Assembly (NCBI RefSeq): GCF_046119375.1
Contig: NW_027362786.1
Span: 14,632,001 to 14,696,000, forward strand
Reading direction: 5' to 3'
Origin: Phyllobates terribilis
Taxonomy: Eukaryota
Length of the DNA stretch: 64,000 nt
The notes below the pieces were generated by a model. The model had not been told where the DNA came from. It saw only the letters and a program-made list of their open reading frames with translations, and searched no databases. Both the position numbers and the translations under genes were made by a program. Positions 1 through 63,000 of this stretch are shown here, one piece after another. Position 1 is the stretch's first letter. Every line of letters starts with the position of its first letter.

Positions 1-3000
1 TGTATATATAATGTACTGATAATACAGGGGTGTACTCACTTATGCTGAGAGCTGTATATATAATGTACTGATAATACAATGGGTGTACTCACTTATGTTG
101 AGCGCTGTATATATAATGTACTGATAATACAGGGGTGTACTCACTTATGCAGAGCACTGTATATATAATGTACTGATAATACAGGGGTGTACTCAGTTAT
201 GCTGAGCACTGTATATATAATGTACTGATAATAACAGTGGTGTACTCACTTATGCTGAGCCCTGTATATATAATGCACTGATAATACAGTGGTGTACTCA
301 CTTATGCTGAGCCCTATATATATATAATGTACTGATAATACAGGGGTGTACTCACTTATGCTGAGCCCTGTATATATAATGTACTGATAATACAGGGGTG
401 TACACACTTATACTGAGCCCTGTATATATTATGTACTGATAATACAGGGGGTGTACTCACTTATGCAGAGCACTGTATATATAATGTACTGATAATACAG
501 GGGTGTACTCACTTATGCTGAGCCCTGTATATATAATGTACTGATAATACAGGGGTGTACTCACTTATGCTGAGCACTGTATATATAATGTACTGAGAAT
601 ACAGGGGTGTACTCACTTATGCTGAGCCCTGTATATATAATGTACTGATAATACAGGGGTGTACACACTTATACTGAGCCCTGTATATATTATGTACTGA
701 TAATACAGGGGTGTACTCACTAATGCTGAGCCCTGTATATATAATGTACTGATAATACAGGGGTGTACTCACTTATGCTGAGCCCTGTATATATAATGTA
801 CTGATAATACAGGGGTGTACACACTTATACTGAGCCCTGTATATATTATGTACTGATAATACAGGGGGTGTACTCACTTATACTGAGCACTGTATATATA
901 ATGTACTGATAATACAGGGGGTGTACTCACTTATACTGAGCACTGTATATATAATGTACTGATAATACAATGGGTGTACTCACTTATGCAGAGCACTGTA
1001 TATATAATGTACTGATAATACAATGGGTGTACTCACTTATGCAGAGCACTGTATATATAATGTACTGATAATACAGGGGTGTACTCACTTATACTGAGCG
1101 CTGTATATATAATGTACTGATAATACAGGGGTGTACTCTGTTATACTGAGCGCTGTATATATAATGAACTGATAATACAGGGGTGTACTCACTTATGCTA
1201 AGCACTGTATATATAATGTACTGATAATACAGGGGTGTACTCACTTATGCTAAGCACTGTATATATAATGTACTGATAATACAGGGGGTGTACTCACTTA
1301 TACTGAGCTCTGTATATATAATGTACTGAGAATACAGGAGTGTACTCAGTTATGTTGAGCGCTGTATATATAATGTACTGATAATACAGGGGTGTACTCA
1401 CTTATGCTAAGCGCTGTATATATAATGTACTGATAATACAGGGGGTGTACTCACTTATGCTGAGCCCTATATATAATGTACTGATAATACAGGAGTGTAC
1501 TCACTTATGCTGAGCACTGTATATATAATGTACTGAGAATACAGGGGTGTACTCACTTATGCTGAGCACTGTATATATAATGTACTGATAATACAGGGGG
1601 TGTACTCACTTATGCTGAGCCCTGTATATATAATGTACTGATAATACAGGGTGTACTTACTTATGCTGAGCGCTGTATATATAATGTACTGATAATACGG
1701 GGGGTGTACTCACTTATGCAGAGCGCTGTATATATAATGTACTGATAATACAGAGGTGTACTCACTTATGCAGAGCGCTGTATATATAATGTACTGAGAA
1801 TACAGGAGTGTACTCACTTATGCTGAGTCCTGTATATATAATGTACTGATAATACAGGGGGTGTACTCACTTATGCTGAGCCCTGTATATATAATGTACT
1901 GACAATACAGGGGTGTATTCACTTATGGTGAGCCCTGTATATATAATGTACTGATAATACAGGGTGTACTCACTTATACTGAGTCCTGTATATATAATGT
2001 ACTGATAATACAGGGGTGTACTCACTTATGCTGAGCCTTGTATATATAATGTACTGATAATACAGGTGGTGTACTCAGTTATGTTGAGCGCTGTATATAT
2101 AATGTACTGATAATACAGGGGTGTACTCACTTATGCTAAGCGCTGTATATATAATGTACTGATAATACAGGGGTGTACTCACTTATACTGAGCACTGTAT
2201 ATATAATGTACTGAAAATACAGGGGATGTACTCACTTATACTGAGCACTGTATATATAATGTACTGATAATACAGGGGTGTACTCACTTATGCTGAGCAC
2301 TGTATATATAATGTACTGAGAATACAGGGGTGTACTCACTTATGCTGAGCCCTATATATAATGTACAGATAATACAGGGGGTGCACTCAGTTATGTTGAG
2401 CGCTGTATATATAATGTACTGATAATACAGGGGTGTACTCACTTATGCTGAGCCCTGTATATATACGGTTCTGATAATACAGGGGGTGTACTCACTTATG
2501 CTGAGCTATGCATATATAATGAACTGATAATACAGGGGTGTACTCACTTATGCTGAGCGCTGTATATATAATATACTGATAATACAGGGGTGTACTCACT
2601 TATGCTGAGTGCTGTATATATAATGTACTGATAATACAGGGGTGTACTCACTTATGCTGAGCTATGCATATATAATGTACTGATAATACAATGGGTGTAC
2701 TCACTTATGTTGAGCGCTGTATATATAATACACTGATAATACAGGGGTGTACTCACTTATGCTGAGCCCTGTATATATAATGTACTGATAATACAGGGGT
2801 GTACTCACTTATGCTGAGCCCTGTATATATAATGTACTGATAATACAGGGGTGTACTCACTTATGCTGAGCACTGTATATATAATATACTGAGAATACAG
2901 GGGTGTACTCACTTATGCTGAGCCCTATATATAATGTACTGATAATACAGGGGGTGTACTCACTTATGCTGAGCCCTATATATAATGTACTGATAATACA

Positions 3001-3584
3001 GGAGTGTACTCAGTTATGTTGAGCGCTGTATATATAATGTACTGATAATACAGGGGTGTACTCACTTATGCTAAGCGCTGTATATATAATGTACTGATAA
3101 TACAGGGGTGTACTCACTTATGCTGAGCCCTGTATATATAATGTACTGATAATACAGGGGTGTACTCACTTATACTGAGCACTGTATATATAATGTACTG
3201 ATAATACAGGGGATGTACTCACTTATACTGAGCACTGTATATATAATGTACTGATAATACAGGGGATGTACTCACTTATACTGAGCACTGTATATATAAT
3301 GTACTGATAATACAGGGGTGTACTCACTTATGCTGAGCACTGTATATATAATGTACTGAGAATACAGGGGTGTACTCACTTATGCTGAGCCCTATATATA
3401 ATGTACAGATAATACAGGGGGTGCACTCAGTTATGTTGAGCGCTGTATATATAATGTACTGATAATACAGGGGTGTACTCACTTATGCTGAGCGCTGTAT
3501 ATATAATGTACTGATAATACAGGGGTGTACTCACTTATGCTGAGCCCTGTATATATACGGTTCTGATAATACAGGGGGTGTACT
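1..3584. repeat. 52-bp tandem satellite/minisatellite (~69 units), left part
   Basis: Unit ctgtatatataatgtactgataatacaggggtgtactcacttatgctgagc(a/c/g) recurs with period 52 (e.g. positions 1 and 53). The array continues off the left edge. Confidence 0.98.
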
Positions 3585-4561
3585 TGTGGCACCCCAGGGG
3601 TCTGGTTTCCACAGTAATGCAATATTATGTCTGAGAGCAGGTGGGAGGTCTCTTGGTCAGGAATCCTATGCATGCCACACCTCCTGCCCAGTCCTGGGAG
3701 GGGAAGAACTTCCCCTATATAAACCGGGGGCTGAGGCAGGGTTAGAGAGAAAGAGTAGAGAACAAGAAGAGAAGCAGCTATAGGAAGAAACAACAGGAGC
3801 TCTGTGGGAGCAGTGCTACAAGGAGTCAGGGGCTGGCAGCTGCAGAGCTCGCCCTGACTGAGAAGTTATCACCGGACCCGGAGTCCGAGGCTGTGGGGAC
3901 TAACCCTTACCCAGCAGCAGAAACCGACCGGCAGGGGATTTCAAGTCCTCTGGCCCAGAAACCCGAAGGCACGGTCACACGCGTGGGACCAGCACCGCCG
4001 TCGTGGAGCGGAAGCCATTAGAAGGCCCCGAGTCACCGGCCATACGGGTGAGCACCACACGGTACACTCAGGGACGTGGGCTACTTTTACCCGCCTCTAG
4101 CAAGGTAGCCAGAAGAGTACAGTTAGTTGGGAAGGCCTACAACTCTGCCTGGCCAGGGGAGTTCCCATCTGCTCAAGGACTGACCAGGCCCCGATCGCTA
4201 GCAAGTACTCCGGGAGGGTCTATCTTTGTCACCAGTAAAGACCCTGAACTACACCGCATCGTCTCTGAGTGGTTCCTGCTACCCCCATCATCCACGTCGG
4301 CTGCCCTGAGGCCATACCCCTCCCGTTGGGGGTTATACCATCCACGCTGCACCATCCTTCCACCGGCCTCAGCGGTCTGCCCTGCAGCGGCAGCTCCATA
4401 GCTGCATTCAACGGGTGGCGTAGTCATCCAACATCTACTGCTAATACTAAGCCACACAGTTTGACACCCTGGGCACGGACCGGGTCACCGCCACAAGGAC
4501 TACTACCCCTGTCCATATCCGGCTCCGGGTATCCCCTGAACATGGCCCAGGGGGCGCGTCA
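3585..4561 (+). repeat. 5' LTR (977 bp)
   Basis: Direct repeat of 10434-11410 with 3 substitutions noticed by eye; TATATAAA at 3716-3723; AGTAAA putative poly(A) signal at 4234-4239. Confidence 0.97.
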
Positions 4562-11410: not shown

Positions 11411-11846
11411 TACTCACCTATACTGAGCACTGTATATATAATGTACTGATAATACAGAGGTGTACTCACTTATGCTGAGCACTGTATATATAAAATGTAC
11501 TGATAATACAGGGGGTGTACTCACTTATGCTGAGCACTGTATATATAATGTACTGTTAATACAGGGGTGTACTCACTTATACTGAGCACTGTATATATAA
11601 TGTACTGATAATACAGGGGTGTACTTACTTATGCTGAGCACTGTATATATAATGTACTGAGAATACAGGGGGTGTACTCACTTATGCTGAGCACTGTATA
11701 TATAATGTACTGTTAATACAGGGGTGTACTCACTTATACTGAGCACTGTATATATAATGTACTGATAATACAGGGGTGTACTCACTTATGCTGAGCTCTG
11801 TATATATAATGTACTGATAATACAATGGGTGTACTCACTTATGCTG
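11411..11846. repeat. 52-bp satellite, right part (~8 units)
   Basis: Same unit as 1-3584, resuming in register after the TSD. Confidence 0.97.
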
Positions 11847-12675
11847 AGGATTGGGGGGTGAGGGTCCCACACATACCATGATTGGAGGATGAGGGGACCA
11901 TACATACCAGGATTGTGGGGTGAGGGGACCACGCATACCAGGATTGGGGGGGGGAGGGGGCCGCACATACCAGGATTGGGGGATGAGGGGTACCAAGCAT
12001 ACAAGGATTGGGGGTGAGGGGACCATGCATACCAGGATTGTGGGGTGAGGGGACCATGCATATCAGGATGAGGGGTACCACACATACCAGGATTGGGGAA
12101 TGAGGGGACCATGCATACCAGGGTTGGGGGATGAGGGGACCATACATACCAGGATTGGGGGATGAGGGGACCATGCATACCAGGATTGGGGGGTGAGGGG
12201 ACCATACATACCAGGTCTGGGGGGTGAGGGGACCATACATACCAGGTCTGGGGGGTGAGGGGACCATACATACCAGGATTGGGGGACGAAGGATACCATA
12301 CATACCAGGATTGGGGGTGAGGGGACCATGCATACAAGGATTGGGGGTGAGGGGACCATGAATACCAGGATTGGGGGTGAGGGGACCATGCATACCAGGA
12401 TTGGGGGTGAGGGGACCATGCATACCAGGATTGGGGCGTGATGGGTGCCATGTATCATGCATACCATTATGTGGGGTACCATGCATACCAGGATTGGGGA
12501 TGAGGGGTGCCATACATACCAGGATTGAGATGAGGGCTACCATGCATACCAGAATAGGGATGAGGGGACCATGCATACCAGGATCCTGGTATGCATGGTT
12601 CCCTCACCCCCCAATCCTGTTATGTGTGGCCCCCTCACCTCCCAATCCTGGTATGTGTGGCCCCCTCATCTCCCA
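11847..12675. repeat. 30-bp G-rich minisatellite with inverted terminal copies
   Basis: Unit ccaggattgggggtgaggggaccatgcata repeated to 12583, then reverse-complement units from 12584. Confidence 0.93.
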
Positions 12676-14043: not shown

Positions 14044-15175
14044 AGCAACACTGACACACCCAAAACCTAGGCTGCAGGTATTTAAATGAAAACTGTGGAC
14101 ATGAGCCACATGCAAGACCCGGGCTGGAGGGAGTGCACCTCCCCACTGCCATCCTGTAGTTCACTCCAAAAATAAAAAATAAAATCCCATGCCATGTTTT
14201 CTTAAATCCAACATAGCCAAATAGTTTGACCAAGTCCAAACTTTACTTTTATTTTGCACTGCAACCACAGCTGTGCCTGTGACTGCAATGCACTCCTGCG
14301 GGTTCAATATGCTTCTATGCGCATCCTGGGGGATACATACTGTCCCTCGCATATGATCCCCCTCACTGTCTCACAATATATATGTGTAACACCTGTTGTG
14401 AGGCCCATGTGTGTAATTTCAGCAGAGTCAGTCTCTACACAGACATTCACAGCAGCAGACTTTAATGAACCTCTTCCTGCACTAACTTGGACTACAACTC
14501 CCAGTAGACATTGCTTCTCTCTACATCACATAGGAGGAGGAGCAACAGAGGAAGAGATGGATTGGATTAGCTGGGCAAGCTGAAGAAGGAGGGAGGAGTC
14601 GAGGCCAGTGAACATGAGGGCTGTCAGCCATTGGTAAGAACAGACAAGACCATTACAGAGTAGTCTTGAGCCACCCCCGTAGTGTTCGAGTTCGGTTCGG
14701 TTCGTCAAACACCCGTATGTTCGACGAACTGTTCGTCGAACTGTAAGACGAACACCTTCGGACACCGTTAAAACCATTGGCAGGCAAACAAAAACACATA
14801 GCAACACATAGAAAACACATAGAAAACACTTCAATGGTTTCCAAAAGCTGACATACTGCTCAGAAGACACAACTAACACATGGAAAAGTAACAAGTACAT
14901 ATAGTCATGCGAAAAGAAAAGAGGTGGAGGAGTTAAAGGAGGGGGAGACACAGATATAGGCATGTCATGCCCTTCTAAAACCAAAAAAGTGCGAAGCCGA
15001 CACGGCCAGTCCGTTCCTGCCCGTGCGACCTCGGTGTCGCCATGTTTGTGCCATAGCTGCTTTGGACCCTGACGGCCAGCCCCCCTCTCCAAATACTGGT
15101 GCCTGTCCGCTGGTGGGTCGAGCGAGCCCCCCTGCGGTGGAGGCAGGTCTAAGCTTTTTCATTTAAATTGTCTCT

Positions 15176-15442
15176 CTAATTTGAATGAGTACACTTTAAA
15201 TACTTTTACAAGGATCTATTGGAGGGCAAGTCTGATGCCAGCAGCTGCGGGAATTCCAGCTCCAGTAGCGTCCACTAATGCTGCTGCAGTTAAAAAGCTT
15301 TTATAAGGATCGAGCTCGGCAGTCCACCGCAAGGCGTCCTACCGCCAGTCCCAGCCCCTGTGCCTTGGGGTGCCTCCCGATGCTCTTCACTGAGTATCCC
15401 GGGGGCCCGAAGCATTTCCTTTGACAAAATTAAGTGTCCAAA
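15176..15442 (+). pseudogene. 18S rRNA gene fragment (helix-18 region into V4), diverged, non-functional
   Basis: GAATGAGTACACTTTAAAT..GGATCTATTGGAGGGCAAGTCTG.TGCCAGCAGC.GCGG.AATTCCAGCTCCA..GCTGCAGTTAAAAAGCT..GGGGGCCCGAAGC.TTT.CTTTGA.AAAATTA matches vertebrate 18S recalled from memory. Only ~270 bp is present. Confidence 0.93.
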
Positions 15443-28088: not shown

Positions 28089-29233
28089 TGTAATGGGTCT
28101 GGGAGGCGGAACCTCTGAGCTACTATACAAGGGGGCGGTCCTTGTAAGGGAGCGGGTGGCGACCAGGCAGGCAGTCACAGCAGGTGACCGGGACAGTCTC
28201 TGGATGAACGGGCAGGAGGTCACGGCAAGTGACCGGGGCAGTCTCTGGATGAACGGGCAGGAGGTCACGGCAAGTGACCGGGGCAGTCTCTGGATGAACG
28301 GGCAGGAGGTCACGGCAAGTGACCGGGGCAGTCTCTGGGTAAAGGGTTGGTACGACCTGTGGCGGCTGATGGTAGACGTGAGCTCCCAGGTGAGTAGGCG
28401 AGAGTCTCTGGATAAACGGGTGGTCACAGCATGTGACGGCGGAGCCTCCAGGAAGACCAACAGACAGGCAGCAGATGAGCGCTCCCAGGTGAGCGGGCAG
28501 AAGTCTCTGGACAGGCGGGTGGTCACAGCATGTGACGGCGGATCCTCCAGGTAGGCTAGCAGACAGGCAGCAGATGAGCGCTCCCAGGTGAGCGGGCAGG
28601 AGTCTCTGGACAGGCAGGTGGTCACAGCACGTGACGGCGGAGCCTCCAGGTAGGCTAGCAGGCAGGTAGCAGATGTGCGCTCCCAGGTGAGCGGGCAAGC
28701 TGGTCCATAGACAGACTGACAGGAGTTGGAAGGCAGACCGTCGGACCTCAGGCAAGCAGGCAGGTAGCTGATGTGCGCTCCCAGGTGAGCGGGCAAGTTG
28801 GTCCTTAGACAGACTGACAGGAGTTGGAAGGCAGACCGTCGGACCTCAGGCTAGCAGGCAAGTAGCAGAATATCAGGCAGGAATAAGACAGCAAGCTGGC
28901 AGGAATCTGGCAGGTAACTGGCAGGTAACTGGCAACGGGACCTGAGGGCTGAAGCAGAGTAGTGAACAGTGCAACAACATTGCTCGGGCACCTCCATTTT
29001 GGAGGAGGTGCCTTATATATGGTGAAGTCCTCCGGCCATTGGCCGGGAACTCCTTAGGACGGTGCGCGCGGCCCCTTTAAGAGGGAGGGAGCGCGCGCGC
29101 GCGCGCCCTAAGCACAGTGGCCGGGAAGGAGCGCGCGCTGCCAGCAGAGCGGGAGGAGGACGCCGGGCTCAGAGCAGAGAGGTGAGGGGAACAGCGTCCC
29201 TGCCTAGCAGAGGGCAGGGACGCCGGCGCTACA
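28089..29233 (-). mobile_element. Solo LTR (1145 bp) of the chromodomain Gypsy family, nested in the Gmr1 LTR
   Basis: TG...CA; 5-bp TSD CCTCC (28084-28088 / 29234-29238); highly similar to 60003-61183. Confidence 0.95.
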
Positions 29234-35791: not shown

Positions 35792-36700
35792 TAGGTGCTT
35801 CTCACAAAATTAGAATATCATCAAAGTTAATTTATTTCAATTCTTTAATACAAAAAGTGAAACTCATATTATATAGAGTCATTACAAACAGAGTGATCTA
35901 TTTCAAGTGTTTATTTCTGTTAATGCTGATGATTATGGCTTACAGCCAATGAAAAAACAAAAGTCATTATCTCAGTAAATTAGAATACTTTATATCAACA
36001 GCTTGAAAAATTATTTTAAAATCTGAAATGTTGGCCTACTGAAATGTATGTTCAGTAAATGCACTCAATACTTGGTCGGGGCTCTTTTTGCATCAATTAC
36101 TGCTCAGTGCGGCAATGTGGCATGGAAGCGATCAGCCTGTGGCACTGCTGAGGTGTTATGGAAGCCCAGATTGCTTTAATAGCAGCCTTCAGCTCGTCTG
36201 CATTGTTGGGTCTGGAGTCTCTCATCTTCCTCTAGACAATACCCCATAGATTCTCTATGGGGTTAAGGTCAGGGGAGTTTGCTGGCCAATCAAGCACAGT
36301 GATACTGTTGTGTGTAAACCAGGTATTGGTACTTTTGGCAGTGTGGACAGGGGCCAAGTCCTGCTGGAGAATGACATTTCCATCTCCAAAAAGCTTGTCG
36401 GCAGAGGGAAGCATGAAGTGCTATAAAATTACCTGGTAGACGGCTGAACTGACTTTGGTCTTGATAAAACACAATGGACCTACACCAGCAGATGACATGG
36501 ATCCTCAAACCATCACAGATTGTGGAAACTTCACACTAGACCTCAAGCAGCTTGGATTGTGGCCTCTCCACTCTTCCTCCAGACTCTGGGACCTTGATTT
36601 CCAAATGAAATGCAAAATTTACTTTGCATTTACTTAGTGTTAATGACTGCCTTCTGGACATCTGTCCAGTCAGCAGTCTTCCCCATGATTGAGGAGCATA
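35792..36700 (-). mobile_element. Tc1 (DD34E) transposon remnant, 3' half
   Basis: TA followed by TIR-like AGGTGCTTCTCACAAAATTAGAATATC; QQDLAP...WPANSPDLNPIENLW with 34 residues between D and E. Confidence 0.85.
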
Positions 36701-36786
36701 CTGAAACTGACTAAGGGACTGTTTTAAATGCTTAGGAAGCCTTTCCAGGTGTTTTTTTTGTTAATTATACTAATTTACTGAGTTAA

Positions 36787-36935
36787 AGGGGTATTCCTAT
36801 CTCCAAGATCCTATCCCAATATGTAGTAGGTGTAATAATAATATTAGAAAATACCTCCAATTAGAAATGTAGTATAGTATTTTTGATTCGCTATGTCTCT
36901 TTCCTCATGTGCAGACATTGCAGGACCTTAGGTAT
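36787..36935. mobile_element. T2/Kolobok-type MITE end fragment
   Basis: TTAA followed by AGGGGTATTCC; the other end was not found. Confidence 0.4.
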
Positions 36936-38811
36936 AGGTATATATAGGTATAATGACTTTTGTGTTCTCATTGGCTGTAATGCATAATCATCAACATTAA
37001 CAGAAATAGACACTTGAAATAGATCACTCTGTAATGACTCTACAGTATATAATATGCACCTGTATGTGCTGCAGTCTTGCCAAGGTAGTTGATCTCCAAG
37101 GCAATGAGCTGTAAACAAAAGAAAAGCGTTAATACCTAAAGTATGGCTAAAAATTTTAATAAGTGGTAAATTGCAAAGTTGCTTAAACCTCTTCCCGACC
37201 TTGGACGTACCCAGTATGTCATGGTTGGTAAGTATGTCATGGCTAAATACGGTACCACGACCGCAGAATTACTATCAGTAGGCTTCCTATAAGTTGTACT
37301 GATTACTGTGTATGTATCTACTTCTCCTATCAATGTTATATCCAAAAAGTTGATGATTCTGAGAGTCAAAGAAAAGGTAAAAGTGAAATTAAATTCATTA
37401 TTATTGATGTATGCTGCAAAATTGATTGCTTCTTCTTCCGAACCTTTCCCAATCAGTATCAAATCATCTATATAATGCCCATAAAAATAATTTATACTAG
37501 AAAATGGATTATTGTTATTGAACAGAAATTCCTGTTCCTAAACAAACCAAGTTTGCTAAAGAAGGGGAGAACTTCCCCCCATACTTACTCCCTGTTTCTG
37601 TAAATAAAAATTGTCATCACATGAAAATAATTGAAGCTTAATAAAAAAGAAACCGGTAGTACTGAAGATTGTTGTATTGTTTCTATGTAAGTACTTCTGT
37701 ATATTTTTTTAGAAAAAATTCCAAACAATATAAAGTCACTTTGTGGGAAATTGAGGGATAAAAACTGACCACATCACAACCTAGCCATCTAAAGGAGGGA
37801 TACCAATGGTAATTCTGGAGAGTTGCAAGTAACACTTTGTTATCTTTGATATGTCCTGGCAATGGTTGTAAGTAGTGGTCCACTCAGTCACCCAATTTCT
37901 CTCCCAGAGAGCCTGTACCCGAGATGATTGGTCTGAAAAGGGGAGGATCCCCATTATCCCTCGATTCCCCACAAAATGGCTTTAAATTGTTTGTATTTTT
38001 TTCTAAAAAAAATAAAGTACTTACACAGAAACAATACAACAATTTTCAGTACTACTGGTTTATTTTTTATTAAGCCACAATTATTTTTCATTTGACAGGT
38101 TATTTATTTTTAAAAGAAACAGGGAGTAAGTATGGGGGGGGAAGTTCTCCCCTTCTTTAGCAAACTTGGTTTGTTTGGGAAGAAGAATTTCTGTTCAATG
38201 ACAATAATCCATTTTCTAGTATAAATTATTTTTATGGGCATTATATAGATCATTTGATACTGATTGGGAAAGGTTCGGAAGAAGAAGCAATCAATTTTGC
38301 AGCATACATCAATAATAATGAATTTAATTTCACTTTTACCTTTTCTTTGACTCTCAGAATCATCAACTATTTGGATATAACATTGATAGGAGATGTAGAT
38401 ACATACACAGTAATCAGTACAACTTATAGGAAGCCTACTGATAGTAATTCAGTTTTGCAAGCACAATCATGCCATTTGCCACATATAATCAAAAACATCC
38501 CAGTGGGGGAACTAATGTGAATGAAAAGAAACTGTTACTCCAAAAATAGCTTTGACAAAGAAGCAGCTGCGGTCCATACCTGATTAAAACAGAGGGGTTT
38601 TCCAGACTGGACCTTACAACAGGCAGAAACTATAGTAGGCAACACTAGTAGGAATAATTTATTACTTGATCATCATAAACAATCTCTGACCAAAATAAAC
38701 AATCAATGCATTACTTTTTCAACCCAATACAGCCCCAAGTAGCAGAAAATTGTTGGTATCATCAAGAAATATCTCCCAATTCTCAATCAGGATCCTAAGC
38801 TATCCAATATC

Positions 38812-39345
38812 ATGCAGAATTTTGATGTGACATTCGTGGCTAAAAAGGCTCCCACCTTAGGCAGTATTCTATCACCTAGCCTTTTTCAAACCAGTATTAA
38901 ACAAAAACCTACTTGGCTTTCGTTGAAAGGTTTTTATAAGTGTGGACACACTCATTGTAAATCATGCAGTCATGCGAATATTAATACTACATTTAGTTCT
39001 AATATTAATAAACAGCAATATGCTATACATAGTTTTATTAATTGTAATACTACGCGGGTTATATACCTTATAGAATGTGCAGAATATCAAATTCAGTATG
39101 TGGGATGTACATCAGGCCCTCTAAAAAAACGCATTCGCAGACATCTTTCTAATGTGGTCAGCCCCACAGCAATAAACATTTCAGCTGTGTCCAACCGCTT
39201 TTGCGATAAACACAATGGTGATACAAAATACATTAAATTTATGGGTATTGAAAAAGTTTTTAAACCTTTTAGAGGAGGTGGTTTAAGAAGGAAAATTCTA
39301 AATAGGGAGTCATTCTACATCTTTATGGTACAGACCAGAGTTTAA
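38812..39345 (+). CDS. Zn-linker plus GIY-YIG endonuclease portion of the PLE ORF (upstream RT part has stops)
   Basis: KCGHTHCKSC...CNTTRVIYLIEC..QYVGCTSGPLKKRIRRH...RES. Confidence 0.88.
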   Translation: MQNFDVTFVAKKAPTLGSILSPSLFQTSIKQKPTWLSLKGFYKCGHTHCKSCSHANINTTFSSNINKQQYAIHSFINCNTTRVIYLIECAEYQIQYVGCTSGPLKKRIRRHLSNVVSPTAINISAVSNRFCDKHNGDTKYIKFMGIEKVFKPFRGGGLRRKILNRESFYIFMVQTRV

Positions 39346-39595
39346 ATGTGAGACAGGATTTGATCTTGCAATACAATTGATCCAATTGTCAGTATGTTTT
39401 ATATGTATCATGGTATTTTCTACCAAAATGTATTTTAATGTGTTGTATCATTCTGTTTTTCATTTGTTTTTCTATTTCACACAATGTTCCCACATAGGAT
39501 TAATGAGGATCTCCGAGCTGGTAATCAAACTGGTGTTTTTGTGATCAAGTAGGAGGGAACTATTATTACTATAAGAGTAACGCAGATGCCTGTCA

Positions 39596-39644
39596 GGTTA
39601 GATCATGACTAAGGCTCTCTAAGCCGAAACGCGTTGATCCAGCC
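39596..39644 (+). ncRNA. Minimal type I hammerhead ribozyme (PLE type), A3:U8 core variant
   Basis: Helix I GGTTaGATC/GATCcAGCC; core ATGACTA; extra A; helix II GGCT/AGCC; GAAA; palindromic ACGCGT; GUU cleavage triplet. Confidence 0.75.
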
Positions 39645-39779
39645 AGGGGCCACTGTGTGCTTTGCTTGGTTTGTTTGTTTTTTAATTGATGAATAAAATT
39701 GATCTTTTACTTACCTTTCATCGCTGGAGAATTTCCTCTTTCTATTTTTTCTCCCCCGCCCCCCTTTGCACCACCTCAG

Positions 39780-40985
39780 TGTGTGCATCCTACAACCGCC
39801 GAGTTGCTGATCAGACTCACTGATTAGCGTCCGTGCTCGCTTTTGGCAAGGACTTTTATTTTTATTCCTGTCTATTCTTTTTTTTATCCTTTTTTTGCAC
39901 CACATTCATGCATGCGTCCTACAGCCGTCGAGCGCTGACGTTCATCAGTGATTGGCCTCCAGTTGTTGTTTTTTTGCATGAAAAACTAATTAATAAATAA
40001 TCATTTAGACTACTTGATAGGACTAGATTAGGAACAGTAAAAATATTATATCTTTTTTACGGGATATAATCGGGGTTAGTGTCAGATAGTTGCGGGCACT
40101 CAGTAATTTTTTTTTTGCTGATGTCCGTTTAGTAAGTTTGTTTTTTATTTTACCAAATTTTTTATATATTTTTTTTATCTTTTTCTTTCTAGATTATTTT
40201 TTTTCTCCTCTTAATAAAAAAAAAGTTTACACCAAACACTCACACACACACACAGAAACACTGTATATGTGAAAAAATGTCATCCCGCTCGTCCCAAACA
40301 AAGTATTCAGCAGAGGAGGCATATGCTTTCCTTGCCTCCTACACTGATGGTGAGGAAGAGGATGCCACTTTCCTTTATTTTTCATCCTCCTCCTCAAGTG
40401 ATACTGAACCGCCACGCAGACGCCTCAGGAGAAAAAAAATGAACCAGCACCCATCGTCACTGACCCTGTATGGACCTCAACACCCCCACCCCTCTCCCCC
40501 ACCAAAATTATGAGCCACAGATTCCTAATTTTGTGGCACAATCGGGAATCGAACTTGACACCACTGGCCTTACAAAAATAGACTTTTTCAAAGTCTTTTT
40601 CTCTGAGGATTTTGTGAACCTTATGGTGGCCGAAACAAATTTGTACACCCAGCAATTTTTGGCCCAAAACACCACAACTTCATTTTCTAACAGGACCCCT
40701 GTAAACGCACGGTGTCCTCCCTGAGATTACCCCAATTTTGACAGTCTTTTCAAAGTTTGGCCGGTCATTGAGCACTTCAACAACAATTTTGCTAAGGTGT
40801 ACGTCCCCCCAAAGGGACATCTGCATGGATGAGTCCCTAATATATTTCAAGGAGAGGCTCAGATTCTGACAGTATCTGCCCAGGAAGAGGGTCAGGTACA
40901 GAATTATGCTCTACAAACTGTGCTAGAATACCTCCGGGTACACCCACAGGTTTAGCGTTTAGGAAGGGAAGGAAGGGTACATAAA
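39780..40985 (+). mobile_element. Degenerate piggyBac relic related to 46403-51376
   Basis: MSSRSSQTKYSAEEAYAFLAS..., IDFFKVFFSEDFVNLMVAETNLY, DICMDESL, with deletions and stops; termini not identified. Confidence 0.8.
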
Positions 40986-60002: not shown

Positions 60003-63000
60003 TGTAACGGGTCTGGGAGGCGGAACCTCTGAGCTACTATACAAGGGGGCGGTCCTTGTAAGGGAGCAGGTGGCGACCAGGGAAGACGGGCAGGCAGTCA
60101 CAGCAGGTGACCGGGACAGTCTCTGAGTGAACGGGCAGGAGGTCACGGCAAGTGACCGGAGCAGTCTCTGGAAGAACGGGCTGGAGGTCACGGCAAGTAA
60201 CCGGGGCAGTCTCTGGGTGAACGGGCTGGAGGTCACGGCAAGTGACTGGGGCAGTCTCTGGGTGAAGGGTAGGTACGACCTGTGATGGCAGAGCCTCCTA
60301 GCAGGCAGATGGTTGATGTATGCTCCCAGGTGAGCAAGCGAGAGTCTCTGGAGTGGCAGGTGGTCACAGCACGTGACGGCGGAGCCTCCAGGTAGGCTAG
60401 CAGGCAGGTAACAGGTGTGCGCTCCCAGGTGAGCGGGCAGGAGTCTCTGGAATGGCAGATGGTCACAGCACGTGACGGCGGAGCCTCCAGGTAGGCTAGC
60501 AGGCAGGTAACAGGTGTGCGCTCCCAGGTGAGCGGGCAGGAGTCTCTGGAATGGCAGATGGTCACAGCACGTGACGGCGGAGCCTCCAGGTAGGCTAGCA
60601 GGCAGGTAACTGGTGTGCGCTCCCAGGTGAGCGGGCGAGCTGGTCCATAGACAGACTGACCGGAGTAGTAAGGCAGACCGTCGGACCTCAGGCAAGCAGG
60701 CAGGTAGCTGACGTGCGCTCCCAGGTGAGCGGGCAGACTGGTCCTTAGACAGACTGACCGGAGTAGTAAGGCAGACCGTCGGACCTCAGGCAAGCAGGCA
60801 GGTAGCAGGAATGTCAGGCAGGAAACAGGCAGCAAACTGGCAGGACTCTGGCAGGAATCAGGCAGATAACTGACAGGAAACTGGCAACGGGACCTGAGGG
60901 CTGAAGCAGAGTAGAACAGTGCAACAACATTGCTCGGGCACCTCCATTTTGGAGGAGGTGCCTTATATATGATGAAGTCCTCCGGCCATTGGCCGGGGAC
61001 TCCTTAGGACGGCGCGCGCGGCCCCTTTAAGAGGAGGGGAGCGCGCGCGCGCGCGCCCTAAGCACAGGGGCCGGGAAGGAGCGCGCGCTACCAGCAGAGC
61101 GGGAGGAGGACGCCGGGCTCGGAGCAGAGAGGTGAGGGGAACAGCGTCCCTGCCTAGCAGAGGGCAGGGACGCCGACGCTACAGTACCCCCCCCTTTAGG
61201 CCCCCCCTTTTTTAGGCCAGACAGAAATTTAGCAAGGATGAGAGGGGCATGGATATTCTCCCGGGGCTCCCACGTTCTCTCCTCAGGACCAAACCCCTTC
61301 CAATCTACCAGAAAAAAGGTTTTTCCTCTTACCCTTTTGGTGGCCAGAATGTTCTCTACCTCAAACTCGTTTTCAGCGGAAACCGGAGCAGGAGGCGTAC
61401 CTGTAGACTTGGAAAAAGAGTTAAGTACCACGGGCTTGAGGAGAGATACATGGAAGGAGTTAGGGATCCGCAAGTTGGCCGGGAGTTTCAATTTATAGGC
61501 CACCGGGTTGATCTGACTGATAACCTCCAGAGGACCGATGAACCGAGGCCCTAACTTATAGGAAGGAATCTTGAGCCGGACATACTTGGACGAGAGCCAG
61601 ACTTTATCCCCAGGACGGAATTGAGGAGGATCCAGACGTTTTTTGTCAGCATGTCTTTTCATACGCTCGGATGACAGAAGGAGTGCGGACCGGGTACTCT
61701 CCCATATGGAGGAAAATTTGTTAACAAGAGATTCCGCAGCCGGATTGTCCACCGAGGTGGAGACGGGAAACGGGATCCGAGGATGCTGACCGAAGACTAC
61801 AAAAAACGGGGATTTGGAGGAAGATTCGCTCTCGTGATTGTTGTACGAGAATTCGGCCCATGACAGGAGATCCACCCAGTCAGAATGGTGGGCATTAACG
61901 AAGTGCCGGAGGTAACTGGTCAGGTTCTGATTGATCCGCTCCACTTGACCATTAGACTGTGGGTGGTAAGCGGAGGAGAAGTCCAGGGTGACGTCTAGCA
62001 ATTTACAAGTGGCTCTCCAGAAACGAGAAGTGAACTGTACCCCTCGATCCGACACGATGTGACGGGGCAGGCCATGAAGACGGAAGATGTGGCGGATAAA
62101 GTCTTTAGCCAGCTCGGGTGCAGACGGGAGGCCTGGCAGGGGAATGAAGTGAGCCATCTTGGAAAAGCGGTCAGCGACCACCCAAATGACCGTACAACCG
62201 GCAGAGACGGGCAGATCAGTTATGAAGTCCATCACTATATGCTGCCAGGGGGCAGCAGGTACTGGCAGAGGAAGAAGGCGGCTGGCTGGCAGGTGTCTCG
62301 GAACTTTGTTGCGGGCGCAGGACACACAGGCAGAAACAAAGTCTATTACATCCTTGTGCAGGTTAGGCCACCAGTAGTGCCGGGTAATAAGCTGGAGGGT
62401 CTTTTTCTGACCGGCGTGGCCAGCTAGTTTAGACGAATGACCCCAGTGTAGGATCTTCTCCCGATCAGGTACTGATACGAACGTCTTACCGGGAGGAAGA
62501 CGATTTAGACTCACGGGAGCCACCTGCATTACTCTGGCGGGATCAATGATATGTTTAGGTTCTTCCTCGAGGTCAGATACCAGAAAGGATCGGGACAAGG
62601 CGTCCGCTTTGATGTTCTTGTCAGCCGGGCGAAAATGTAGAACAAAATCAAAGCGAGCAAAATACAAGGACCACCGGGCTTGGCGCGGGTTAAGTCTCTG
62701 GGCATGCTGGAGATAAGCCAAGTTCTTGTGGTCAGTGTAAATTATTACCGGATGAAGAGCCCCCTCGAGCAGGTAACGCCACTCCTCCAATGCCAGTTTG
62801 ATGGCCAACAACTCTCGGTCTCCTATGGAATAATTGCGCTCTGAGGAGGAGAAGAGTTTAGAGAAGAAGCCGCAAGTTACCATCCTCCCGGAAGATGATT
62901 TTTGAGTAAGTACCGCTCCGGCTCCAGAGGAGGAGGCGTCAACTTCCAGGAAGAACTGCTTGTTGCCGTCCGGGCGATGCAGTACCGGGGCGGAAGAGAA

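What the first reader, a model, noticed from the sequence alone, without database searches (positions are those of the whole stretch)
39596..39644. Hammerhead ribozyme with a compensatory A3:U8 catalytic-core variant
In the PLE 3' region the sequence folds as a minimal type I hammerhead. Helix I is GGUUaGAUC/GAUCcAGCC; the core is AUGACUA instead of CUGANGA, so the C3:G8 tertiary pair becomes A3:U8 with pairing preserved; there is an extra A, helix II GGCU/AGCC, then GAAA. The palindrome ACGCGU allows helix III to form only between two molecules (dimeric cleavage, as described for PLE hammerheads). Predicted cleavage is after GUU (39635). Standard CUGANGA searches would miss it, so a class of amphibian ribozymes could be under-counted.
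Basis: partly seen in the sequence, partly recalled or inferred. Interest (0 to 1): 0.75.

Follow-up and report, generated by a model that had tools for sequence, protein, structure and literature searches.

The report
Frog Penelope hammerhead with A3:U8 core
A small self-cleaving-RNA (hammerhead) motif sits at the tail of a dead Penelope-like jumping gene in a frog. Its odd but pairing-preserving core swap is inherited by a whole group of related frog elements, so it is a natural variant of a known ribozyme kind and not random decay.

Summary
Window 39596-39644 (+) has every part of a minimal type I hammerhead of the kind carried by Penelope-like elements (PLEs). It lies 250 nt after a GIY-YIG endonuclease ORF remnant on the same strand. 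A relaxed descriptor finds it once in the window and never in 300 shuffles.

The core AUGACUA (A3:U8 in place of C3:G8) is not a private decay. Related PLE tails fetched through their endonuclease proteins (39-54% identical; several from the alpine tree frog) carry ATGANTA in three more cases. One has GTGAATA, one a broken ATGACAA and one TTGATGA. Helices I and II covary, and the other catalytic nucleotides are unchanged in all but one decayed copy. Distant PLEs from metagenomes keep CUGANGA.

The "extra A", G10.1-C11.1 and the palindromic ACGCGU are published hallmarks of PLE hammerheads (Cervera & de la Pena 2014). That paper also reports a natural U3-A8 swap. I found no paper reporting A3-U8.

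Catalysis is untested. One deep mutational study found only the G3:C8 swap active. This copy is a 5'-truncated pseudogene with no partner hammerhead within 64 kb. Rfam does not detect it.

The scan has flagged the same A3-U8 motif at least 16 times elsewhere in this genome. Verdict: real; a new variant of a known kind; moderate interest.

The parts
39596..39604 (+). Helix I, 5' strand (GGUUAGAUC)
   Evidence: It pairs with 39636-39644 in 8 of 9 positions. The four pairs nearest the core covary in relatives.
39605..39611 (+). Catalytic core positions 3-9: A3 U4 G5 A6 C7 U8 A9 (AUGACUA in place of CUGANGA)
   Evidence: The same ATGANTA core occurs in L005, L006 and L009.
39612..39612 (+). Unpaired A between positions 9 and 10.1
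   Evidence: It is present in all 7 aligned relatives. Cervera & de la Pena 2014 describe it as a conserved feature of PLE min-HHRs.
39613..39625 (+). Helix II (GGCU/AGCC, closed by G10.1-C11.1) with the 5-nt loop CUCUA
   Evidence: 96% of cells are paired and 3 of 4 pairs show changes on both sides in relatives. Paralog contigs differ by indels at 39616 and 39621, at the two edges of loop 2.
39626..39629 (+). G12 A13 A14 A15.1 (GAAA)
   Evidence: A13, A14 and A15.1 are invariant in the 7 relatives; only L004 has G12 changed to A.
39629..39634 (+). Palindrome ACGCGU: helix III can form only between two molecules
   Evidence: Relatives have ACRYGT. RNAcofold puts the dimer at -32.9 kcal/mol against 2 x -14.1 for monomers, with an intermolecular AACGCGUU duplex.
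39635..39636 (+). U17 and G1.1: the predicted self-cleavage site lies between these two bases
   Evidence: Inferred from hammerhead numbering. The site reads GUH in all relatives. No read evidence for RNA ends exists, because only contigs were available.
39636..39644 (+). Helix I, 3' strand (GAUCCAGCC)
38017..39345 (+). 5'-truncated PLE ORF remnant in a single frame with 5 in-frame stops: RT C-terminal part, linker, CCHH zinc finger and GIY-YIG endonuclease
   Evidence: Translation. Pfam GIY-YIG E = 1.2e-5 on 38812-39345. Homologues are 39-54% identical.
37266..37696 (-). Inverted PLE fragment abutting the + copy, with arms 98% and 92% complementary to 38015-38450
   Evidence: I1, I19. Craig et al. 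2021 describe this arrangement as typical of PLE insertions.
39598..39733 (+). Hammerhead-bearing tail module of about 136 nt that also occurs elsewhere in the genome without the ORF
   Evidence: Paralog contigs in two DNA runs align from 39598/39600 to 39733/39734. Summed contig depth rises about tenfold at 39574-39707.
39692..39697 (+). AATAAA, 56 nt after the predicted cut
   Evidence: An AATAAA also follows the hammerhead in L011. Use as a poly(A) signal is inferred only.

Best explanation
This is a genuine Penelope-like-element (PLE) minimal type I hammerhead motif. It lies in the 3' untranslated tail (pseudo-LTR region) of a 5'-truncated, stop-riddled PLE copy. Its A3:U8 core pair is an inherited trait of a group of frog PLE lineages and is not damage private to this copy. 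By analogy with other PLE hammerheads, two copies of the RNA pair through the palindrome ACGCGU to build a shared helix III. Each core then cuts its own strand after U17 (39635|39636), which would trim PLE transcripts to unit length. What is shown: the motif, its PLE context, its recurrence in relatives, and covariation of helices I and II with conservation of the catalytic nucleotides. What is inferred: that the A3:U8 core is catalytically competent, that it works as a dimer, and what cleavage does for the element. This particular copy is a fossil. Its ORF is broken and no second hammerhead lies within 64 kb.
For: The motif is unique in the window and absent from 300 shuffles. It lies 250 nt after a GIY-YIG ORF on the same strand, and the inverted 5'-truncated partner typical of PLEs is present. 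In relatives found through the endonuclease protein, a hammerhead sits 138-373 nt after the ORF stop. The cores are ATGACTA (L006), ATGAGTA (L009), ATGAATA (L005), GTGAATA (L004), ATGACAA (L007) and TTGATGA (L011). None has C3:G8. On the 7-sequence alignment, 77.8% of cells pair against 24-37% when the partners are slid. No shuffle in 500 reaches the observed pairing or covariation score, and 14 of 17 pairs change on both sides. U4, G5, A6, A9, A13, A14, A15.1 and U16.1 are invariant. On the endonuclease tree the A:U type falls in two groups separated by long branches, while the G8 type falls in a third group and in the outgroup. Going from C:G to A:U needs two transversions, which is not the usual transition decay. 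The unpaired nucleotide after A9, G10.1-C11.1 and the palindromic helix III match the published PLE min-HHR signature. The dimer is predicted to be more stable than two monomers. [quoted passage not shown]
Against: No cleavage data exist for any A3:U8 hammerhead that I could read. In comprehensive pairwise mutagenesis of a type III hammerhead, only the G3:C8 swap rescued activity. All other double mutants at these positions were poorly active (PMC9901934). PLE min-HHRs cleave poorly in vitro even with canonical cores. Rfam hammerhead models give no hit at E<=10. There is no partner hammerhead in the window. No RNA ends could be examined because all runs are kept as contigs. Only 7 relatives were sampled, two of them visibly decayed. 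The endonuclease tree is weakly resolved, with several open forks.
Confidence: 0.75

Rival explanations
1. The motif descends from a hammerhead but the A3:U8 form is catalytically dead. It would be kept in this PLE clade for some other reason, for example as a structured 3' tag recognised by the element's reverse transcriptase, or as a dimerisation signal.
For: Only the G3:C8 swap was tolerated in deep mutagenesis of a hammerhead. PLE min-HHRs have very low activity in vitro, and their authors leave open functions other than cleavage. Naiad PLEs thrive without hammerheads.
Against: All catalytic nucleotides other than 3 and 8 stay invariant across lineages whose endonucleases differ by about half their residues, apart from G12 to A in the decayed L004. 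A purely structural role would not require that. Natural U3-A8 hammerheads exist, and covariants at these positions are reported to be active in vitro.
Confidence: 0.2
2. ATGACTA is a private decay of a canonical CTGANGA core in this one dead copy.
For: The copy is a pseudogene with 5 in-frame stops.
Against: The same ATGANTA core occurs in three further diverged relatives, and G3:U8 occurs in a fourth. Two independent transversions that restore pairing are not expected from decay. No A>C at 39605 or T>G at 39610 appears among the differences listed for paralog contigs, although 96 rows were hidden.
Confidence: 0.03
3. The match is a chance resemblance to a hammerhead.
For: The monomer folding energy is not better than that of shuffles (z = -0.49). 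There is no Rfam hit.
Against: 0 of 300 shuffles match the descriptor. The position in a PLE tail is as expected. Homologous motifs with covarying helices occur in relatives.
Confidence: 0.01

Closest known systems
Minimal type I hammerheads of metazoan Penelope-like elements (min-HHR; Cervera & de la Pena 2014, PMC4209133). From memory only, Lunse, Weinberg & Breaker 2017 is also relevant; it is not held in the library.
   Same: It lies in the PLE tail / pseudo-LTR on the ORF strand. Helix I is open. There is an unpaired nucleotide between 9 and 10.1 and a G10.1-C11.1 closing pair. There is no intramolecular helix III, and the palindromic 15.x-16.x segment implies a dimeric active form. Helices vary widely between families.
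   Different: The core pair is A3:U8 instead of C3:G8. Helix II here is 4 bp, whereas 7-8 bp are described for Schistosoma. Descriptors with a fixed CUGANGA box would not retrieve it.
Natural U3-A8 hammerhead covariants (Perreault et al. 2011, PMC3088659; Schistosoma Cercyon PLE, about 1,300 motifs, Cervera & de la Pena 2014)
   Same: The tertiary 3:8 Watson-Crick pair is replaced by another Watson-Crick pair while the rest of the core is kept. In Schistosoma this also occurs inside a PLE family.
   Different: The orientation is reversed (purine at 3, pyrimidine at 8). I found no report of this in the papers I could search. It cannot be reached from U3-A8 or C3-G8 through wobble intermediates. 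A route through G3:C8 and G3:U8 is conceivable, and L004 has G3:U8.
Amphibian satellite-2 / non-LTR retrozyme hammerheads (Epstein & Gall 1987; de la Pena's group 2020, PMC7229834; Li, Clavereau & Pollet 2026 preprint)
   Same: They are amphibian type I hammerheads with a weak palindromic helix III that act as dimers. They are proposed to be non-autonomous derivatives of PLE pseudo-LTRs.
   Different: Those have a canonical CUGANGA core and loop 1-loop 2 tertiary contacts, and they sit in tandem units of about 330 nt. This one is a single copy in a PLE tail with an A3:U8 core and no loop 1.

Membership tests
Hammerhead ribozyme (general) | Conserved core nucleotides C3 U4 G5 A6 N7 G8 A9 / G12 A13 A14 / A15.1-U16.1 / H17 | tested here: inconclusive
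   All are present except C3 and G8, which are A and U. The 3:8 pair is preserved as a Watson-Crick pair. The same state recurs in relatives.
Hammerhead ribozyme (general) | Three helices around the core, supported by covariation | tested here: met
   Helices I and II: 77.8% of cells paired against 24-37% in slid controls, and 14 of 17 pairs change on both sides. Helix III exists only as an intermolecular palindrome.
Hammerhead ribozyme (general) | Match to the Rfam hammerhead covariance models | tested here: not met
   There is no hammerhead hit at gathering score or at E<=10. This is expected for motifs without helix III and with a changed core, so it weighs little.
Hammerhead ribozyme (general) | Site-specific self-cleavage giving a 2',3'-cyclic phosphate and a 5'-OH | not testable with these tools
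   Only contigs were available, so RNA ends cannot be seen. Mutagenesis in another hammerhead argues that A3:U8 is weak.
PLE minimal hammerhead (min-HHR) | Located in the pseudo-LTR / 3' tail of a PLE, on the ORF strand | tested here: met
   It starts 250 nt after the stop of the GIY-YIG ORF on the + strand. Relatives have it 138-373 nt after the stop.
PLE minimal hammerhead (min-HHR) | Nucleotide between 9 and 10.1, G10.1-C11.1, and palindromic 15.2-16.2 (features listed in PMC4209133) | tested here: met
   A at 39612, G39613-C39625 and ACGCGU at 39629-39634. These are shared by relatives.
PLE minimal hammerhead (min-HHR) | A second copy nearby (tandem or second pseudo-LTR) to allow dimeric cleavage | tested here: not met
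   The descriptor scan and a covariance model with filters off find no second motif in the 64-kb window. This copy could pair only in trans with RNA from other loci.

The most novel reading that the evidence does not exclude
A3:U8 is a catalytically competent, selectively maintained natural hammerhead core that defines a clade of anuran Penelope-like elements and their short derivatives. In that case many motifs per frog genome are invisible to CUGANGA-based descriptors and to Rfam. It would also mean the 3:8 pair can evolve to a purine-pyrimidine orientation, perhaps through G3:C8 and G3:U8, although laboratory mutagenesis scores it as poorly active.
Probability: 0.45. Interest if true: 0.55.

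Novelty: new variant of a known kind. Interest (0 to 1): 0.42.

Why it matters
Hammerhead censuses in animal genomes rely on a fixed CUGANGA box or on models trained on it. A whole PLE lineage with an A3:U8 core would therefore be left out of counts of ribozymes and of PLE-derived elements in amphibians. It also offers a natural test of how much the C3:G8 tertiary pair can change. Laboratory mutagenesis says almost only G:C works, whereas evolution here has kept A:U together with an otherwise intact catalytic core. If active, it widens the accepted hammerhead consensus. If inactive, it shows that a hammerhead scaffold can be retained for a non-catalytic role.

Tried and rejected
Rfam scans at gathering score and at E<=10 gave no hammerhead hit.

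The monomer folding z-score was uninformative.

A canonical CTGANGA...GAAA pattern gave 9 window hits, not clearly above chance and none at a PLE.

A 3-mismatch search, the descriptor scan and a covariance model with filters off found no second copy of the motif in the window.

Laying runs on the stretch returned only contigs, so there was no information on RNA ends, strand or expression. Most per-position differences were hidden, so same-family copies could not be read base by base.

Several relatives' contigs showed no hammerhead: L001, L002/L003, L008, L012, L013 and L026. Some of them end too soon after the ORF (L008, L013, L026).

The 14-protein alignment was too diverse for the locus search. 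A 6-protein alignment found 12 distant PLE loci in metagenomes, of which only L015 and L022 showed clear hammerheads, both canonical.

Papers by Lunse et al. 2017 and Przybilski & Hammann 2007b, which could settle whether A3-U8 has been reported or assayed, are not held. No supplement of the 2014 paper is held.

Full report
WHAT IS THERE

The stretch 39596-39644 (+) reads, in hammerhead order, as follows:
- helix I 5' strand GGTTAGATC
- core ATGACTA (positions 3-9)
- one unpaired A
- helix II GGCT / AGCC with loop CTCTA
- GAAA
- the palindrome ACGCGT, which includes A15.1 and U16.1
- U17
- helix I 3' strand GATCCAGCC

The predicted cut lies between 39635 and 39636.

IS IT MORE THAN CHANCE?

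I wrote a descriptor that accepts any Watson-Crick 3:8 pair. It also requires 0-1 extra nucleotide after A9, a helix II of at least 4 bp closed by G-C, GAAA, a palindromic helix III, a non-G at 17 and a helix I of at least 4 bp. It hits once on both strands of the window, at this place, and never in 300 dinucleotide-preserving shuffles.

Folding energy alone is not informative (z = -0.49). Rfam's hammerhead models do not see the motif even at E<=10. That is expected for a motif with no intramolecular helix III and a changed core.

CONTEXT

The motif lies 250 nt after the stop of an ORF (38812-39345, +) that matches the GIY-YIG endonuclease domain (Pfam E = 1.2e-5). This ORF is preceded by the CCHH zinc finger typical of Penelope-like elements (PLEs).

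Read in one frame from 38017 to 39345, the + strand gives the C-terminal part of a PLE protein: RT end, linker, zinc finger and GIY-YIG. It has five in-frame stops and no frameshift.

An inverted fragment of the same element abuts it. Arms 37266-37580 / 38136-38450 are 98% complementary and arms 37624-37696 / 38015-38087 are 92% complementary. Craig et al. 2021 describe this 'inverted 5'-truncated copy' arrangement as typical of PLE insertions (PMC8557442).

So the element is a dead, 5'-truncated PLE and the motif is in its 3' tail, where PLE hammerheads are expected. No second hammerhead exists in the window.

IS THE A3:U8 CORE PRIVATE DECAY OR A FAMILY TRAIT?

A protein search with the endonuclease ORF found 13 relatives at 39-54% identity, all from Logan assemblies. 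I fetched their contigs.

Six of them carry a hammerhead 138-373 nt after the ORF stop:

| Locus | Core | 3:8 state | Note |
|---|---|---|---|
| L006 | ATGACTA | A:U | |
| L009 | ATGAGTA | A:U | |
| L005 | ATGAATA | A:U | |
| L004 | GTGAATA | G:U wobble | also G12 to A |
| L007 | ATGACAA | A:A | helix II also decayed |
| L011 | TTGATGA | U:G | one transition from canonical |

None has CTGANGA. All have the unpaired A after A9, helix II closed by G-C or G-U (except the decayed L007), the palindrome ACRYGT, and GUH at the cut.

Two distant PLEs recovered from metagenomes (26-31% identical) carry canonical CTGAAGA (L015) and CTGATGA (L022).

On a 7-sequence alignment, U4, G5, A6, A9, A13, A14, A15.1 and U16.1 are invariant, while the helices change. 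The pairing counts are:
- 77.8% of cells pair, against 24-37% when partners are slid by 1-3 columns.
- No shuffle in 500 reaches the observed pairing or covariation score.
- 14 of 17 pairs change on both sides.
- Helix II is 96% paired, with three of four pairs compensated.

A quick maximum-likelihood tree of the endonucleases places the A:U-type elements in two groups. One holds the window, L005, L004 and L007. The other holds L006 and L009. They are separated by end branches of about 0.1-0.9 changes per site. The G8-type L011 sits in a third group and the canonical ones in the outgroup. Several forks are open, so a single origin is likely but not shown.

C:G to A:U needs two transversions that restore pairing, which is not what transition-dominated decay produces. 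I conclude that A3:U8 is inherited within a frog PLE clade.

[quoted passage not shown] The organisms behind the other runs are unknown to me.

SAME-GENOME COPIES

Laying contigs of two DNA runs on 38100-40100 at 80% likeness shows summed contig depth rising about tenfold over 39574-39707. Paralog contigs align from 39598/39600 to 39733/39734, that is, from the 5' edge of the hammerhead to the end of the PLE tail. The few listed indels fall at the edges of loop 2 (39616, 39621).

No A>C at 39605 or T>G at 39610 is listed, but 96 rows were hidden, so this is weak support.

Earlier notes of this scan report the same A3-U8 motif at least 16 times elsewhere in this genome. They include a 148-nt module, TSD-flanked inserts and a decayed 70-bp tandem array. 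These are unchecked leads that agree with what I see. They are not independent evidence.

HOW IT PROBABLY WORKS

The architecture is that of the published PLE minimal hammerhead. Cervera & de la Pena 2014 list the nucleotide between 9 and 10.1, G10.1-C11.1 and the palindromic 15.2-16.2 as recurrent features. They propose dimeric cleavage of PLE precursor RNAs, with low activity in vitro (PMC4209133).

RNAcofold predicts that two copies of the window motif pair through AACGCGUU. The dimer energy is -32.9 kcal/mol against 2 x -14.1 for monomers.

The mechanism is therefore inferred as follows. Two hammerhead-bearing RNAs, or two units of a tandem transcript, form a shared helix III. Each core then cuts after U17.

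Conservation of the general-base G12 and the rest of the core across diverged lineages argues that cleavage, and not mere structure, is under selection.

There is evidence against. Comprehensive pairwise mutagenesis of a type III hammerhead found that only the G3:C8 swap rescues activity, and all other double mutants there were poorly active (PMC9901934). On the other hand, natural U3-A8 hammerheads exist, and covariants at 3:8 are stated to be active in vitro (PMC3088659). From memory, Przybilski & Hammann 2007b found that tolerance depends on context, but I could not read it.

I put the chance that A3:U8 dimers cleave at roughly 0.5-0.6. This particular copy has no partner within 64 kb and sits in a pseudogene, so it is a fossil whatever the family does.

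COMPARISON AND NOVELTY

PLE hammerheads, their dimeric mode, the extra nucleotide and a 3:8 covariation (U3-A8) are all published. What I could not find in the searchable literature is the A3:U8 state. Published PLE searches use 'cuganga' descriptors, and Rfam misses the motif, so under-counting is plausible.

Lunse et al. 2017 reported very many PLE-associated variants (from memory, about 150,000) and may already include such cores. It is not held.

I file this as a new variant of a known kind, of moderate interest.

The covariance model R1 was built only from the natural 47-55-nt motifs.

Noticed in passing
window 39598-39733: The hammerhead plus the PLE tail (about 136 nt) recurs elsewhere in the genome as a unit that starts right at the 5' edge of the hammerhead, without the ORF. 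Paralog contigs in two DNA runs show this. It may be a short non-autonomous PLE derivative or a favoured 5'-truncation point.
   Followed up: partly
window 39760-40100: A very abundant dispersed repeat lies immediately after the PLE tail, with summed contig depth of 1000-4000 against about 10 for unique DNA. It has two sub-repeats of about 128 nt beginning TGCACCAC and many rearranged paralogs. The family was not identified.
   Followed up: no
window 35888-37032: A short element bounded by 83-nt inverted repeats (93% complementary) encloses a Tc1/mariner-like transposase fragment (ORF 36232-36414, minus strand). It lies just left of the inverted PLE fragment.
   Followed up: no
window 15161-15265: A fragment of eukaryotic 18S rRNA (Rfam RF01960, 77.6 bits) sits in non-ribosomal surroundings.
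   Followed up: no
window 3-2500 and 11832-12675: There is a 52-bp satellite array of at least 47 copies at the start of the window, and a G-rich 31-bp minisatellite with an inverted section.
   Followed up: no
window 28121-29233 and 60044-61183: Two copies of a region of about 1.1 kb are 88-97% identical and lie about 31.9 kb apart. The region contains 45-bp and 99-bp internal tandem repeats.
   Followed up: no
L004:1272-1326: A related frog PLE tail has a G3:U8 wobble in the hammerhead core, together with G12 changed to A. It could be a transition away from A3:U8, or a relic of a G3:C8 to G3:U8 to A3:U8 route.
   Followed up: partly
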